NCBI RefSeq assembly: GCF_021028975.2
Contig: NC_059427.1
Span: 67,022,001 to 67,086,000, forward strand
Length of the DNA stretch: 64,000 nt
Origin: Sphaerodactylus townsendi
Taxonomy: Eukaryota
Direction of reading: 5' to 3'
Below, in pieces: positions 36,509 to 58,433 of the stretch. The notes under the pieces were generated by a model. It worked only from the letters and a program-made list of their open reading frames with translations. It did not search any database and was not told the origin of the DNA. Positions within the stretch are counted from its first letter, which is position 1. Each line of letters opens with the position of its first letter. Both the position numbers and the translations under genes were made by a program.

Positions 36509-37359
36509 TGATAGATCATCTCAGCAGCTTGAAACAACCAGTTCCAGGCATTTCAGAAAAGCTTGTCTACAAAAAATTAGTTTCCCTTTTGGAAGTGAAA
36601 ACTACCATATTTTCAGTGGCAATCCAGTGCTTCCCACCAAAAGATCACATATCATGAGCTGGAAACCATATTTTTATTGTCTTCTGACAGAATGTTTCTG
36701 ACTTTCCACCAGCATCTGGAATATAGGTGCAGAGATGTAGCTAGGGAAAATGGAGCCTGGTGCAAAATCTGAGCCCCCCCCCCCCCCTCCACGTATGGAC
36801 GGCCTCCCCTCGACCAAAGGCCGGCCTCCCCCACTACGACCAAAGAACAATTTTTTGCACCATGTCATCTCAAAGTCACAATCACATTATAGAACATGCC
36901 CCAACTCACAAATCTGAACACATGCCCCAACTCACAAATCTGGACTCCCTGGTTGAAACAACATTGAAAGTGATGCTGTTTGAGGGGGTGGGGGAATCCA
37001 CCCTGAAACAGCATCAATTTTAATGTTGTTTAAAGAGCCCAGATTCTTCTTTTAAATCCACCTTAAAGGGAGAATCTGGGCTCTCTAGTTTAAACAACAT
37101 TGAAAATGATGCTGTTTCAAGGTAGATTCCCCCCCCCCAAAAAAAAACAGCATCACTTTCAATATTGTTTAGACAAGGGAGCCCAGATTCTCCTTTTAAA
37201 TCCACCTTAAAGGGAAAATCCCCAAGACCCTGGACTAAACAACATTGAAAAATGATACTGTTTCAGGAATGAATCCCCCCCCAAAAAAACAGCATCACTT
37301 TCAATGTTGGTTGTTGTGTGTTTTCCAGGCTGCGTGACCGTGGTCTGGTAGATCTTGTT

Positions 37360-37400
37360 CCTAATGTTTCACCTGCATCTGTGGCTGGCATCTTCAGAGG
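37360..37400 (-). ncRNA. Minimal hammerhead ribozyme motif, inverted copy (sense to TEX264 pre-mRNA)
   Basis: Reverse complement CCT-CTGAAGA-TGCCAGCCACAGATGCAGGT-GAAA-C-ATT-AGG. Confidence 0.72.
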
Positions 37401-37472
37401 TGTATCACAAAGAGAAGTCTGTTATACACTGTGTCCAGACTTCTCTTATTACAGACTTCTCTCTGTGATACA

Positions 37473-37513
37473 CCTCTGAAGATGCCAGCCACAGATGCAG
37501 GTGAAACATCAGG
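37473..37513 (+). ncRNA. Minimal type-I hammerhead ribozyme motif (Penelope-associated)
   Basis: CCT-CTGAAGA-T-GCC..GGT-GAAA-C-ATC-AGG: CUGANGA and GAAA core boxes, stem I CCT/AGG, stem II GCC/GGT. Confidence 0.75.
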
Positions 37514-40500
37514 AACACGATCTACCAGACCACGGCCACATGGCCAGAAAACCCACATCAACCAATTGAATCCATCTGTGAAAGCCTTCGACAATACTTT
37601 CAATGTTTTTTTTAATCTAGGGAACCCAGATTCTCCCTTTAAATCCACTCAGAAGTGACCAGAATCTGGGGACAATTTGAGGGTGCCAGTTAGGGGAGCA
37701 ATGTTTAAGTTAGAAGTACCAAAATTTCAGGCTACTTTCAGGATACTATCCTGATGATACCACCCAGGTTGAGTGAAGTTTAGTTTAGGGGGTCCAAAGT
37801 TATGGACCCTCAAATGGAAGCCCCATCTACTACTAGCTCCCATTGGAAACAATGGGGGGTGGGGGCACCCCTTTGGGGGGTCCATAACTTTGAACCCCCT
37901 ACTCACACCAAACCTGGACTGAATATCATCAGGAGTGTCACTGATGATAACCTGAAATTTTGAATTGCCCATGAATCTAAAGAGATTGCGCCCCCCTGCC
38001 AGCCGACAAAGTAAAAACAGTAAAATATTTTTTAAAATACATTTTTGAGTTTTGGCGCCCCCTGTAGGCGTGTGCCCAGTGCAATGCCCACCCCTCCTGT
38101 CCCCTGGTGGCTATACCACTGTATAGGTGCAAAGTAGAGCAACTGTAGCCTCTGCTGCTGTTGAATCTAAACAACGAGGAAAATGTCAGTTTGGACAATC
38201 AAACTCCATACTTTGACATTTAACAATAATATTTGACTGCCCTTATTGGACCATAGTAAAGAGGGAGAATGCTTTTCTAATCTGATCCCTAGCAGACAGT
38301 TTAGCTATTGACCCCTTTTTTAGAATCCAGAAGCACATGTGTGCAAAAGATTCACCAAACTGTTGCTCATTTCTTCATAATGCACACTTTTTGTTGAGTC
38401 GTAGTAGGATGAGATAGTTCAAAGGGAAAATGTACTTCCAGGCTGCTTTTCTAGAATGAAATGTGGATGTCCTGGCTTGTTATGCTATCTTACCCATGCC
38501 TATGGACTGTTGGATTGTATCTCACGGAGCAGCAAATGTTTGTGTAAACCAGCTTTAAATATTAAATAACTGTTGAGGCAGGACACAATCTGAATAAGTA
38601 GGTTCCTCTCTAGAATTTTTGACAGCCTATGTGTTCCCCCTTCAACAGAATATAATAGGCAAAAACAAATAAAATCCCACTTACCGCAGAACAGCCTAAG
38701 AACATATTCGGCTGCACTTTGTAGTACATAATTGACAGTTTTGCCTTTTTGTGTGGGCTGTACAAATCTTACTCTACCCTTGATGTTTATATACCCTTTC
38801 CCTAGATACCTAGCCTACCTAAGGACAGGAAGGTCAGAACAATACACTGTACATTACACAAGCAGAAATGTAAGTACCAGTTGCAAATACAGTCTGTAAA
38901 GTACATTTCAGATTACAAAGGCTTCATAAATGATAAATATAGCAGCAGAATTAAGTGCATGCCTCGGAACGACAAGAAATCACTTGGGCTCCATTTATCA
39001 GCAGACAACAATACAAGTCCTAATACTGTTTAATCAGTTGCATACCAGCCTACAAGCCGAATACAAAAGTGGAGCGGTTCCTATCCATCCCTGAACATGG
39101 AAGTTGGAGCTGCACACTGGCAATACAAGCTCACTGAAGTCAACAGGACAGCCTTGAAGGGCTATTCTCCCCATATGGGCCCACATGGACCCTACAGTCT
39201 TCTCGCCACGGCTTGCTTTTGGCTCCCTCTCTAAGTGAGATGAAGAGAGTCTCAGCATAGGCAAGAATGTTTTTTTGTGGCAGCTCCATCCCTTTGTGGA
39301 ACAGGCTGCCAGATGTCGTGAGGGCTGTTCCTTCACTTCCGTGTTTTCAGAATAAATGCAAGGGGTGGGGAGGGGGGGAGCAGTTGCTTTTCAAAAGTCT
39401 TTAGTCTGAATGCTGGTTTTATACTGTTTTTCTAGGAGAAAATGATGTTTTTTGTTATTTATTATATATTCAATGTCAGGTTTGGAGACCATCTAATAAG
39501 CTAATAGGAACAGAACTATAAAATATATTCAACTGATAAAATGTCTGTAACAAGAGCCAGCCCTAAAACCACACTGTGAAAAGAGAGTGAAAAAGGCAAG
39601 AAGACTCTGCCACATTTTCATTATATTGTGCCTCAGAAACCTGAAAACTTTGAGAAGTGAATCACAAGGACAGTGACACAGCTGGAAACAGCAAAGTGAT
39701 ACTGCCACTCAATAACTTTCCCTCGCACAATCTGATCTCCTGTCTTCTGCTGTCTGAAAATCAACCTTGTGGGGGAGAAGCCATAATTGTGCCCAGGCAA
39801 CCATCTGAGGGACAAACTACAGTGCACCCTAAAATTGCTAAGTTACCCTTTACATAAGTAATGGGGGGAAAGTCCACCTCAGACATATGTTTTTTGGCAG
39901 AATGCTCAGATTTGCCTGGGAACAACATGGGTATTAGTAACGTATCCCCAAAGTACCAATTCCAGTTTGCTTTTTTCCTGAGGCACAACCCTTCTCCCAC
40001 CCCTGAAATCTACTAAGCACTAAAGCATTTAAAATGAAACATTAATAGGATGGAAAATAATTGGTTTTTATTGAAGAACATTTACCTCACTACAGACACA
40101 CACATGCTAGGGAAAGAGACATGGCATGCCAATGACAGCCATACTAGCAATTAATAGTGACAGATGTTTTAATTTACAGTTTAACACAGCCTACAGATTT
40201 TCTGATCATCATGGGTTTAAAGTTTGGTTATTGTGAAATACTAAATTTCTGCTGCCATAAACAAGGATTTGTTTGGCAATGCCTGGAATTCAAAAATTGG
40301 CTCAGGATGGTGATAACACCCCACACTCAACTGAAGTATGTTTTTCATACATCCACGGGTAAATTCATGCATAACCATGGTTGTAGGAGAACTCTGGAGA
40401 AACACAGGAGCCCATAGCAATGTAAGGGCAGTGAGATGTTTGTGAGAGACAGAGCACCAGCAGAAAGAGAGAGAAAGCAACTGGTAAGCTGCTATCACTA

Positions 40501-51049: not shown

Positions 51050-51731
51050 TTAACAAATAATTGCCAATAAACCCTTATTCCTACATTATGAGGTATTTAT
51101 GATCTGGATATCCAGTCACTTAGGAGAGCTTTTACACTCGCCAGATGTGATACCCTTCCATTGTAGCGTTAGATGGTAGATAGAAGAAAATACCATATAT
51201 TGGTAGGCTTTGTGCATAAGAGATGGCGGATATAGAGACCCTGTCACACATTTTCCTACGATGTTCCCTGCATAAGGAGATGAAGGTAAAAATGTTTAGC
51301 TCTCTCCCATTAGCAATTTATCTGAAACAGAAAAGCTGTATGAAAAGGTTTTTAGAAGATGATACTCCTAACATCACAAGAGTGGTGGCGAAATTCAGTA
51401 CTTACATTGTTAAAAGTTATAGATATAAACAGGGTAATTTAAACACAAATTGGTGGTAGGCTGTTTGGATTGTCAAGTTTATATTTTGGTTTTAAACATC
51501 ACCAGTGCTATCAGTTTTGAGATTTGATTTTATCTTATGGTTTTAACATTTTGTATCTGTAAAATTCTTGCAGTTTTAAATAATATTCCCAATTTTTTTA
51601 TTTGGAAATTGGAAACTGTATTTAATAATTTGGAAACTGTATTTGGAAATTTGGAAACTGTATTTGGAAATTTGGAAACTGCATTTAATAATTTCTGGTC
51701 TTCGACCATAATAAAACTGATTGATTGATTC
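51050..51731 (+). mobile_element. RTE-X-like LINE 3' fragment
   Basis: Reads RRAFTLARCDTLP..GR*KKIPY..RLC...IETLSHIFLRC (C-terminal zinc-knuckle region); ends GGTCTTCGACCATAATAAAAC(TGAT)n. Confidence 0.7.
51602..51694. repeat. 21-bp tandem repeat (TTGGAAACTGTATTT[AATAAT/GGAAAT]) x ~4
   Basis: Direct reading. Confidence 0.9.
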
Positions 51732-51988
51732 TGAGGTATTCACTGAAACAAGCAGAGCTGTTTTCAGTGGAATTCATCTATTATCGGAGATGTACAAGCA
51801 GAAAAATAGCTTTTCCTGTGTGGTTGTTGTGGGTTTTCTAGGCTGTGTGGCCATGATCTGGTAGTTTTGCCTGCATCTATAAGAGGAATATCATGGTAAG
51901 ATATGCACAGTAAGTTATGCACCAAGACACATGTAAATGTACCTCACCCACTTTCACTTTGAGGCGAACAAAACATATACCCCACCAC

Positions 51989-52360
51989 CAGTCACGTAGC
52001 TACCATGGGACGAGGGCGTTCCAAACCCTGGGTGCATGCCATTGGGGCAGGGGGGGGGCAAAAAATTGCCCCACACACCCCTCCTCTCCTTCTTCCACCT
52101 TGCCAGGCCCAGCAGAGGCCACTCCTGGGTGCCCCTGCCCGGCCCTGCCCCACCAGCCAGGCCCCTGGGGGGCCGCGGCCCTTACCCTGTCCCCCAACTT
52201 GTCTTAATTCAGCCGGAGGCCCAACCAGACTGCTTTTTCAACTGGCTGCTCTTTGCAGCCAGCTAAACTAAGTGGGGGGGTGATGGGGGGCGCGGCTCTA
52301 CGATGGGCAGGGCTTCATGAGGACAGGGCCTGGACACCATTTCCCCCTCCTATGCCACTT
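51989..52360. mobile_element. 372-bp GC-rich non-autonomous hAT
   Basis: Perfect TSD CCCACCAC; termini CAGTCACGTAGC / CCTATGCCACTT. Confidence 0.8.
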
Positions 52361-52411
52361 CCCACCACTCCACACTGTGGCACAGAGAGAAACACATCTC
52401 ACCATGACATA

Positions 52412-52452
52412 CCTCTGAAGATGCCAGCCATAGATGTGGGTGAAACATATGG
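52412..52452 (+). ncRNA. Degenerate hammerhead motif (third copy)
   Basis: CCT-CTGAAGA-TGCCAGCCATAGATGTGGGT-GAAA-CATATGG. Confidence 0.55.
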
Positions 52453-52860
52453 AGCAAAAACCCAACCCAGGCCACATCAGACCACCAGATCAAGGCCACA
52501 CAAGCCAGAAAACCCACAACAGCCATGAAAGCCTTCAACAATAATTTTTTTCCTGTCCTTTCCCCCAACTGCAAAAAGTAAAACATTTCTGAGGTTAAAG
52601 GTCTCTCACCAGCCAACATTCAGATGCGAGCCTTGTTCAATTGTTATGGATACCTAAATGCCCTCAGATTCAGCCCTCCTCTCATACTGGGCTGCCAATG
52701 GGGTGGGGGAGGGAGGACGATACAAAATTCCTGGGGCCCTAGTCAGGTTGAGGGCCCAATGAAGCTCGAATCATCATTTCAAGATTTTTTTACGCTTAGT
52801 GCAGTTCATTACTACAGCCACTAAGGGTGTAGGCAAAGAGGAGCAGATCAAGCAGACATA

Positions 52861-58175: not shown

Positions 58176-58433
58176 CGTGTGAGGATTATCATAGTAGACA
58201 GCAATGGAGCACATCTTTGGAGAGATGCTGCAGCTCTCCGTAAACAGCCTCCCACAGTCACCATAAGGCCCCACCTGGAATTTGTATGCCACAGTGATGT
58301 TGCCAATGGGGGGCAAACCAGCACTAACCACCACTTCTGAGAAGATCCCTGAATAAACAGCAAAGCCGAAGAGCGTCAGCAGCAGAAGTATAACCAGTGC
58401 CACAAACAGTCCAATGAACAGCCAGTCCGACAT
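58176..58433 (-). CDS. TEX264: TEX264 first coding exon (codons 1-86: N-terminal transmembrane anchor and start of GyrI-like domain); the exon including 31 nt of 5' UTR spans 58464-58176
   Basis: Translation MSDWLFIGLFVALVILLLLTLFGFAVYSGIFSEVVVSAGLPPIGNITVAYKFQVGPYGDCGRLFTESCSISPKMCSIAVYYDNPHT closely matches the vertebrate TEX264 N-terminus. ATG in GCCATG context; acceptor ttctctcttgtctctag| before 58464; donor ACG|GTAAG after 58176; 258 nt, phase 0. Confidence 0.97.

What the first reader, a model, noticed from the sequence alone, without database searches (positions are those of the whole stretch)
37309..37595. Compact palindromic Penelope-derived element with twin back-to-back hammerhead ribozyme motifs and a 12-bp TSD
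Seen: a 287-bp non-coding insertion made of two inverted ~115-bp arms, each carrying CCT-CTGAAGA-stem II-GAAAC-NTH-AGG (37360-37400 on -, 37473-37513 on +), flanked by a duplicated ACTTTCAATGTT. Known: Penelope-like elements carry minimal type-I hammerheads in their pseudo-LTRs, proposed to work as dimers, and often insert with an inverted 5' pLTR. Inference: the same inverted architecture with the same left boundary recurs at 51820-52543, so this may be a self-contained non-autonomous ribozyme-bearing unit (retrozyme/SINE-like) rather than random truncation. One motif is sense to TEX264 pre-mRNA and could cut the intron co-transcriptionally, although the long hairpin should mask it.
Basis: partly seen in the sequence, partly recalled or inferred. 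Interest (0 to 1): 0.8.

Follow-up and report, generated by a model that had tools for sequence, protein, structure and literature searches.

The report
Ordinary fold-back Penelope retrotransposon fragment
The 287-bp palindrome is real, but it is a routine dead-on-arrival fragment of a Penelope-like retrotransposon whose shape follows from how these elements are already known to insert, and its two hammerhead motifs are decayed and locked in a long hairpin.

Summary
Observation confirmed. Window 37309-37595 is an insertion with two inverted arms and an exact 12-bp target-site duplication. An uninterrupted copy of the host repeat 142 bp upstream serves as an empty site. Each arm carries a CUGAAGA...GAAAC hammerhead-like box.

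Interpretation only partly supported. The unit is the pLTR/ORF junction of a Poseidon-type Penelope-like element (PLE). The ORF start codon lies at the base of stem II, the predicted cut is 26 nt after it, and the N-terminal peptide resembles Anolis Poseidon_Ac. The sense copy ends at about +114 and the inverted copy at about +83. These are the two internal reverse-transcription start sites, and the ~34-nt "tail" between them, that Frangieh et al. 2024 mapped for an enzyme that extends both target strands. The shared left boundary is therefore enzymology, not evidence of a dedicated unit.

Inner junctions differ between the two window copies and among family copies in public reads. The motifs lack two of four PLE min-hammerhead signatures, get no Rfam hit, sit in the 3' arm of either transcript, and cost about 83 kcal/mol to free. 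RNA reads show no ends at the predicted cut sites. It is not a retrozyme.

Other readers of this scan noted the same architecture elsewhere in this genome. Interest is low.

The parts
37297..37308 (.). Left copy of the 12-bp target-site duplication ACTTTCAATGTT
   Evidence: Exact repeat of 37596-37607. The host repeat unit at 37155-37166 has the 12-mer only once (D4).
37309..37428 (-). Inverted 5'-truncated PLE copy. Read as sense it runs from about -37 to about +83 relative to the PLE start codon (ATG at 37391-37389 on the minus strand). It has no tail.
   Evidence: Alignment to the sense arm. It translates as MPATDAGETLG.... Its outer end equals the first RT start site, i.e. the tail boundary at nt ~85 in PAc.
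37360..37400 (-). Hammerhead-like motif of the inverted arm (CCU-CUGAAGA-U-stem II-GAAA-CA-U-U/AGG). The predicted cut lies between 37363 and 37362.
   Evidence: Pattern match. No Rfam hit.
37426..37595 (+). Sense 5'-truncated PLE copy, about -56 to +114 relative to the ATG at 37482-37484. It covers the end of the pLTR and the first 38 codons of the PLE ORF.
   Evidence: Alignment to copy 2 starts at 37426. It translates as MPATDAGETSG..., against MPAIDVGETSG... in Poseidon_Ac. Its last 18 nt match the PAc nt 99-116 18-mer with 2 mismatches.
37473..37513 (+). Hammerhead-like motif of the sense arm. The predicted cut is after 37510, which is 26 nt after the ATG, as in PAc.
   Evidence: PAc geometry from PMC11167929. 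The isolated 53-mer folds no better than shuffles.
37564..37595 (+). 32-nt 'tail': sequence present at the sense 3' end but absent from the inverted arm.
   Evidence: Alignment. It matches the published 30-40-bp PLE tail and the ~34-nt PAc tail at nt 85-119.
37596..37607 (.). Right copy of the 12-bp target-site duplication
37145..37205 (.). Neighbouring uninterrupted unit of the host tandem repeat, serving as a paralogous empty site
   Evidence: D1, D3, D4. Family copies of the host repeat that lack the insert appear as joints 37308->37620 and 37308->37627.
51820..52547 (+). Second fold-back PLE insertion. It has an inverted arm from 51820, a GC-rich interior, a sense copy from about 52372, one hammerhead box at 52412-52452, and a shorter tail.
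51811..51819 (.). Left 9-bp TSD (TTTTCCTGT) of the second insertion. The right copy is at 52548-52556.
   Evidence: flank print

Best explanation
This is a dead-on-arrival, heavily 5'-truncated insertion of a Poseidon-type Penelope-like retrotransposon, made in one integration event.

Inferred mechanism: the element's GIY-YIG endonuclease nicked both strands of an AT-rich target 12 bp apart. Reverse transcription was primed on both target strands from the two adjacent internal start sites near the beginning of the PLE ORF. One strand started at about +114, giving the sense copy with the 32-nt tail. The other started at about +83, giving the inverted copy without a tail. Both cDNAs stopped shortly upstream of the ORF start, at about -56 and -37, and were joined head-to-head.

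The hammerhead motif straddles the ORF start, so both short copies carry it by default. This produces 'twin' motifs on opposite strands.

Shown here: the anatomy, the TSD, the homology, the coincidence of the boundaries with published start sites, and the energetics. Inferred: the order of events at integration. The unit has no function of its own. Any transcript through it folds into a hairpin of about 120 bp.
For: TSD and empty-site paralogue.

Homology to Poseidon_Ac: the PAc nt 99-116 18-mer hits only the two element 3' ends, with 2 mismatches each (2 hits against 0.06 expected). The N-terminal peptide matches 9 of 11 residues. The ATG sits at the base of stem II and the cut site is 26 nt downstream, exactly as described for PAc.

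Boundaries: the sense 3' end lies at +114 by this copy's own count from its ATG. This aligns by eye to PAc nt 116 and falls within the published RT start zone of 111-118. The inverted arm ends at the equivalent of about +83-85. The tail is 32 nt against the published ~34 nt at nt 85-119.

Published enzymology: PAc cleaves and extends both strands and prefers AT-rich targets. An inverted 5'-truncated copy plus a one-sided 30-40-bp tail is the textbook PLE architecture (PMC8557442; PMC3846280; PMC8969392). Opposed min-hammerheads 100-700 bp apart were already reported (PMC4209133).

Heterogeneous inner junctions: unit 1 against copy 2. Among the 15 joints shown of 947 found in family copies, the left side lies at 37390-37400 and the right at 37473-37482, with varied filler letters.

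No long ORF in the window: the largest is 181 aa (ORFs were not searched for RT or EN domains).
Against: The comparison with Poseidon_Ac was made by eye and with one short pattern, because the consensus has no reference usable in the alignment tools. Overall identity in the middle of the arm is low, so this is a different subfamily.

The read pile-up is family-level at 80% likeness, not locus-specific. It is biased toward short-spacer fold-backs because contigs are only about 100-260 nt. It therefore shows heterogeneity but not the full junction distribution.

A self-priming (snap-back) origin of the inversion, proposed by Arkhipova et al. 2013, is not excluded.

Several notes from this scan report fold-backs of similar size (about 250-290 bp) elsewhere in the genome. 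This could mean a preferred truncation zone.
Confidence: 0.85

Rival explanations
1. A dedicated non-autonomous fold-back element (retrozyme-like or SINE-like) that is transcribed, processed by its own hammerheads and re-mobilised in trans by PLE enzymes.
For: Fixed outer boundaries in both window copies. Many short fold-backs in the family. Several same-genome notes report units of about 250-290 bp. PLE pLTRs can mobilise foreign sequence in trans. Vertebrate non-LTR retrozymes are reported to derive from PLE pLTRs (preprint 10.64898/2026.07.22.740005).
Against: The motifs are on opposite strands, so no transcript carries two sense ribozymes, whereas retrozymes are tandem direct repeats. The unit ends at +114, but in vitro the template needs sequence up to +172. 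Inner junctions and lengths differ: 287 against 728 bp, with heterogeneous joints. The ribozyme lacks two signature features and is buried in the hairpin.
Confidence: 0.07
2. An exapted intronic RNA element. Either the sense hammerhead cuts the TEX264 pre-mRNA, or the long hairpin acts as a regulated dsRNA, miRNA-like or editing substrate.
For: The hairpin is very stable: MFE -193.6 kcal/mol, z = -23.7. There are sub-threshold hits to miRNA precursor models. The family is transcribed in a related organism. A TEX264-like exon lies at 58182-58400 on the minus strand.
Against: The miRNA hits reach 47 bits or less against gathering scores of 53-93, which is what any long hairpin would give. No RNA ends pile up at the predicted cut sites, and 1592 reads run through the site uncut. 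Enforcing the hammerhead fold costs +82 to +85 kcal/mol, and the motif is always in the downstream arm. The arms have drifted 13% apart, with 7 transitions among 17 mismatches and no compensatory pattern examined. PAc itself needs its protein to cleave.
Confidence: 0.04
3. Not a retroelement insertion at all: either a MITE-type DNA transposon with terminal inverted repeats, or a fold-back assembly artefact.
For: Palindromic shape with flanking direct repeats. No listed public contig spans the whole locus.
Against: The arms are unequal by exactly the PLE tail and show homology to the PLE ORF start. A 12-bp TSD of variable length between copies (12 and 9 bp) fits PLEs. The arms differ by 13%, whereas an assembly fold-back would be near-identical.
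Confidence: 0.02

Closest known systems
Poseidon_Ac / PAc, the Penelope-like element of Anolis carolinensis (Arkhipova 2006; Frangieh et al. 2024, PMC11167929)
   Same: The hammerhead straddles the ORF start. The cut site is 26 nt after the ATG. The N-terminal peptide is MPA.D.GETSG. The 3' end falls in the +111-118 RT start zone, with the second boundary about 32-34 nt upstream (the tail). The target is AT-rich and both strands are used for priming.
   Different: It is a different, older subfamily. The middle of the arm (+33 to +70) is poorly alignable, the reading frame is shifted before the ...ESLRQ... block, and the ribozyme departs from the PAc consensus at positions 11.1 and 16.2. There is no RT or EN coding sequence here.
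Minimal type-I hammerheads of metazoan PLEs (Cervera and de la Pena 2014, PMC4209133)
   Same: [quoted passage not shown] Occurrence as opposed pairs 100-700 bp apart was already reported.
   Different: G10.1 faces U rather than C. Positions 15.2/16.2 are C/A, so they are not palindromic and the dimer helix III cannot form. Helix II has an A-A mismatch.
Metazoan non-LTR retrozymes (Cervera and de la Pena 2020, PMC7229834; Li et al. 2026 preprint)
   Same: Short, non-coding, hammerhead-bearing, related to PLE pLTRs, with TSDs longer than 4 bp.
   Different: Retrozymes are tandem direct repeats with canonical type-I ribozymes (loop-loop contacts) in the same sense, and they yield circRNAs. Here there is a single head-to-head inverted pair with minimal motifs.
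L1 5' inversions by twin priming (own knowledge: Ostertag and Kazazian 2001)
   Same: An inverted 5' segment joined to a 5'-truncated sense copy within one TSD-flanked insertion, explained by priming from both target strands.
   Different: In L1 the second primer anneals at random internal sites. In PLEs the outer end of the inverted copy is fixed, because RT starts at defined internal sites.

Membership tests
Penelope-like element insertion (Penelope/Poseidon clade) | Sequence homology to a PLE pLTR/ORF junction | tested here: met
   The PAc 18-mer (nt 99-116) matches both element ends with 2 mismatches, 2 hits against 0.06 expected. The peptide MPATDAGETSG compares with MPAIDVGETSG. The full alignment to the consensus was done by eye only.
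Penelope-like element insertion (Penelope/Poseidon clade) | 3' end at an internal RT start site, and a 30-40-bp tail present at one end only | tested here: met
   The sense copy ends at +114. The inverted copy ends 32 nt short of that. The published tail is about 34 nt, at nt 85-119, or 30-40 bp, or 31 bp.
Penelope-like element insertion (Penelope/Poseidon clade) | 5' truncation with an adjacent inverted 5'-truncated copy (head-to-head) | tested here: met
   Described as typical.
Penelope-like element insertion (Penelope/Poseidon clade) | Variable-length TSD at an AT-rich target | tested here: met
   12 bp (75% A+T, followed by a T run) and 9 bp in the two copies. Variable TSD length and AT preference are given.
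Penelope-like element insertion (Penelope/Poseidon clade) | RT plus GIY-YIG EN open reading frame | tested here: not met
   Only the first 38 codons are present. No ORF in the window exceeds 181 aa. This is expected for a truncated copy, so it is a fragment and not an autonomous element.
Hammerhead ribozyme, PLE min-HHR class | Catalytic boxes CUGANGA and GAAA, with H17 before helix I | tested here: met
   H17 is C in the + arm and U in the - arm.
Hammerhead ribozyme, PLE min-HHR class | [quoted passage not shown] | tested here: met
   A U follows CUGAAGA in all three motifs.
Hammerhead ribozyme, PLE min-HHR class | Conserved G10.1-C11.1 pair | tested here: not met
   All three motifs read ...GGU-GAAA, so G10.1 faces U. 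PAc has C there.
Hammerhead ribozyme, PLE min-HHR class | Palindromic positions 15.2-16.2, allowing a dimeric helix III | tested here: not met
   The motifs read GAAA-CA-U (C/A), whereas PAc has CG. The duplex of two such segments scores only -0.4 kcal/mol.
Hammerhead ribozyme, PLE min-HHR class | Recognition by curated covariance models (Rfam Hammerhead families) | tested here: not met
   No hit at gathering score nor at E<=10 on 401-nt and 64-nt stretches. Caveat: the min-HHR class lacks helix III and may not be modelled in Rfam, so this is weak evidence.
Hammerhead ribozyme, PLE min-HHR class | Self-cleavage | not testable with these tools
   Indirect only. There are no RNA ends at the predicted sites in family-level RNA-seq. 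The published PAc ribozyme needs its protein, and no in vivo ends were seen.
Non-LTR retrozyme | Tandem direct repeats carrying same-sense type-I hammerheads that release circRNA | tested here: not met
   The two motifs are on opposite strands in a single head-to-head pair.
SINE-like non-autonomous retroelement | Defined 5' end and uniform internal structure shared by copies, with a retained RT recognition region | tested here: not met
   The inner junction and length differ between the two window copies and among family joints. The unit stops at +114, whereas the in vitro template needs sequence up to +172. The last point is an inference across subfamilies.

The most novel reading that the evidence does not exclude
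Short fold-back PLE copies (about 220-290 bp) may be a preferentially produced class in this lineage. This could reflect a defined 5' end or RT stop just upstream of the hammerhead. If so, they seed thousands of near-perfect ~100-bp hairpins in introns that feed dsRNA pathways (endo-siRNA or piRNA production, or ADAR editing) and so affect host transcripts.
Probability: 0.1. Interest if true: 0.45.

Novelty: already known. Interest (0 to 1): 0.12.

Why it matters
It matters little as a discovery. It is a clean natural example of a published mechanism. In a subfamily other than the one studied in vitro, both outer ends of the insertion fall on the two internal reverse-transcription start sites, and the tail has the published length. 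This supports the idea that dual-strand priming produces the inverted PLE structures. Practically, it explains the many 'palindromic twin-hammerhead' notes this scan has raised in the same genome. They should be read as ordinary PLE insertions unless a census shows a uniform, separately evolving fold-back family.

Tried and rejected
1. Rfam scans gave no hammerhead hit on the whole window at gathering score, on 401 nt at E<=10 or on 64 nt at E<=10. The only hits were sub-threshold miRNA-precursor models, rejected as generic long-hairpin matches.

2. Read laying was run at 80% likeness in the hope of seeing an orthologous empty site in relatives and locus-specific RNA ends. The result was a family-level pile-up with no piece spanning the locus, so it gave no dating and no locus-specific expression. 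The single begin/end pile at 37316 is judged to be an alignment boundary near the element edge, not an RNA end. 88% of RNA reads were only partly aligned.

3. The apparent concentration of joints at 37400->37473 is not taken as a hot spot. It coincides with where this copy's subfamily-specific sequence begins, and up to 40 unaligned letters may lie between the two sides.

4. I looked for an A>G excess in RNA as a sign of editing. The share is 49/224 in RNA against 25/137 in DNA contigs of the same organism. That is not a meaningful difference at family level.

5. Pfam on the putative TEX264 exon returned nothing. The atlas gives TEX264 clusters only as leads, at 0.82 and 0.77. Gene identity rests partly on my own recollection of the TEX264 N-terminus, and the intronic position of the element was not proven.

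6. A full alignment to the Poseidon_Ac consensus was not run, because that sequence has no reference usable by the tools and I did not type it in.

7. The search of earlier findings by place returned nothing nearby, and the word TEX264 was not found.
Full report
**1. The observation**

The sequence at 37309-37595 is as described.
- The repeat finder gives inverted arms at 37322-37426 and 37447-37551, 105 nt and 90% complementary.
- BLAST of the unit against the window aligns 262 nt to its own reverse complement at 85%.
- The exact 12-mer ACTTTCAATGTT flanks the unit at 37297-37308 and 37596-37607.

The flanks belong to a ~142-bp tandem host repeat. The neighbouring unit (37145-37205) has the 12-mer once, preceded and followed by the same sequences that flank the insertion (D1, D3, D4). 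It is therefore a paralogous empty site, and the duplication is a genuine target-site duplication.

The pattern CTGANGA-N10-30-GAAAC occurs 5 times in the window against 0.85 expected. Three of the five are in the two elements.

**2. What it is**

The published Poseidon_Ac consensus from Anolis (File S1 of PMC11167929) begins with the ORF start codon. In a tandem copy it is preceded by ...CCTCTGAGG, so the hammerhead straddles the start codon.

The same geometry is seen here:
- On the + arm the ATG is at 37482-37484, at the A9-U-G10.1 junction.
- The predicted cut is after 37510, which is 26 nt after the ATG. Frangieh et al. state exactly this for PAc.
- From that ATG the arm translates as MPATDAGETSG..., against MPAIDVGETSG... 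in PAc.
- The inverted arm gives MPATDAGETLG....
- The PAc 18-mer at nt 99-116 matches only two places in the window, with 2 mismatches each. Both are element 3' ends: 37578-37595 and 52525-52542.

The middle of the arm aligns poorly to PAc and the frame shifts. This is a different and older subfamily. No ORF above 181 aa is in the window, so no full-length autonomous element is evident nearby.

**3. Why it has this shape**

Aligning the inverted arm (as sense) to the sense arm shows they are collinear from the hammerhead outward, until the inverted arm stops at 37309, which corresponds to 37563 on the sense arm. The sense arm continues for 32 more nucleotides, 37564-37595.

The literature describes this architecture directly:
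- PLE insertions are heavily 5'-truncated, often with an inverted 5'-truncated copy adjacent, and with a 30-40-bp 'tail' at one end only (Craig et al. 2021; Arkhipova et al. 2013, 31-bp tail and 8-10-bp TSDs; Goubert et al. 2022).
- Frangieh et al. 2024 showed in vitro that the Anolis enzyme cleaves and extends both target strands, prefers AT-rich DNA, and starts reverse transcription at two adjacent internal sites. The tail is the sequence between those sites, about nt 85-119.

Here the sense copy ends at +114, which aligns by eye to PAc nt 116. The inverted copy ends at about +83. The 'same left boundary' in the second copy (51822-51838, 0 mismatches to the 17-mer) sits 2 nt further out, still within the first start zone.

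The fixed outer ends are therefore an enzymatic signature, not evidence of a dedicated element.

**4. Inner junctions**

In unit 1 the sense copy reaches about -56, since its alignment to copy 2 begins at 37426. The inverted copy reaches about -37. The apparent 20-nt loop is the extra 5' part of the sense copy.

Copy 2 (51820-52547, TSD TTTTCCTGT) differs in several ways:
- It is 728 bp long.
- Its left-arm hammerhead has been lost.
- It has a GC-rich interior of about 440 nt.
- It has a 19-nt insert after GAAACAT.
- Its tail is 14 nt shorter.

I laid contigs of three related organisms and one RNA-seq run on 36900-38000 at 80% likeness. This gave a family-level pile-up:
- The element, and especially its hammerhead bins, is extremely abundant.
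- 947 joints were found. Among the 15 shown, the left side lies at 37390-37400 and the right side at 37473-37482, with different filler letters (AT, T, GAT, ATCA, ATCTGA and others).
- Other copies run on into longer pLTR sequence, seen as loose ends at 37400 and 37473.

This shows heterogeneous junctions. However, it is biased toward short spacers because contigs are short, and toward 37400/37473 because the subfamilies diverge there. I do not claim a hot spot.

**5. The ribozyme motifs**

I compared the motifs with the four emergent signatures of PLE min-hammerheads.
- Present: the catalytic boxes and the extra nucleotide after A9.
- Absent: G10.1 faces U rather than C, and positions 15.2/16.2 are C/A rather than palindromic, so the dimer helix III cannot form (-0.4 kcal/mol).
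- In addition, helix II has an A-A mismatch and helix I is 3 bp.

All three motifs in the window share these two departures, while several other CpGs in the arms survive. I infer that the departures were probably inherited from the source RNA rather than acquired independently. That would fit the published result that ribozyme mutants still insert.

Rfam finds no hammerhead at any threshold. This is weak evidence, since the class lacks helix III. The isolated 53-mers fold no better than shuffles.

**6. Could it cut the host transcript?**

The arrangement is head-to-head, so the sense motif lies in the 3' half of either transcript. It starts at position 165 of 287 on the + transcript and at 196 on the - transcript. 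Its perfect complement is therefore always synthesised first.
- The whole unit folds at -193.6 kcal/mol, z = -23.7.
- Enforcing the hammerhead pairs costs +82.5 or +84.5 kcal/mol.
- No transcript carries two sense motifs, so the dimer model does not apply.
- In the RNA run, no ends pile up at 37510/37511 or 37363/37362, and 1592 reads run through the site into PAc-like sequence. This echoes the published absence of such ends in Anolis.

A TEX264-like exon lies at 58182-58400 on the minus strand (atlas leads; own recollection of the protein). The element would then be about 21 kb downstream in the direction of transcription. I did not prove that it is intronic.

**7. Comparison and verdict**

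The unit is a fragment of a Poseidon-type PLE, with the membership features met apart from the coding sequence.
- It is not a retrozyme. Those are tandem direct repeats with same-sense canonical type-I ribozymes that yield circRNAs.
- It is not SINE-like. Its internal structure is not uniform, and it lacks the +115 to +172 region that the template needs in vitro.
- Opposed min-hammerheads 100-700 bp apart were reported in 2014.

Other readers of this scan have flagged the same architecture many times in this genome. These are unchecked AI notes, consistent with the abundance seen.

The finding is real but ordinary.

Noticed in passing
window 36940-37308 and 37596-37680: The PLE inserted into another repeat: ~142-bp tandem units built of mutually inverted segments with C-run/A-run junctions. 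It is present at very high copy number in three related organisms and is transcribed at a low level.
   Followed up: partly
window 37751-37898: A second very high-copy repeat with an internal inverted repeat (GGGTCCAAAGTTATGGACCC / GGGTCCATAACTTTGAACCC). It shows about 450-590 RNA reads per bin in each orientation in run X21. Its family was not identified.
   Followed up: no
window 51930-52371: The interior of the second PLE insertion is GC-rich with long G/C runs and is unlike a PLE ORF or pLTR. It could be captured host sequence or a nested insertion. PLEs are known to carry foreign sequence between pLTRs.
   Followed up: no
window 58182-58400 (minus strand): A coding exon ending at a GT donor. 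Its translation (...VSAGLPPIGNITVAYKFQVGPYG...SIAVYYDNPH) resembles the TEX264 N-terminus. Atlas leads scored 0.82 and 0.77, and Pfam returned nothing.
   Followed up: partly
window 51601-51705: A 21-bp tandem repeat, four to five units of the TTTGGAAACTGTAT type, immediately upstream of the second PLE insertion.
   Followed up: no
window 37514 onward (family-level reads, run X21): 1592 RNA reads continue past 37514 with letters close to the Anolis Poseidon_Ac consensus, at 0.89 agreement. A Poseidon_Ac-like subfamily is therefore transcribed in the related organism C.
   Followed up: partly
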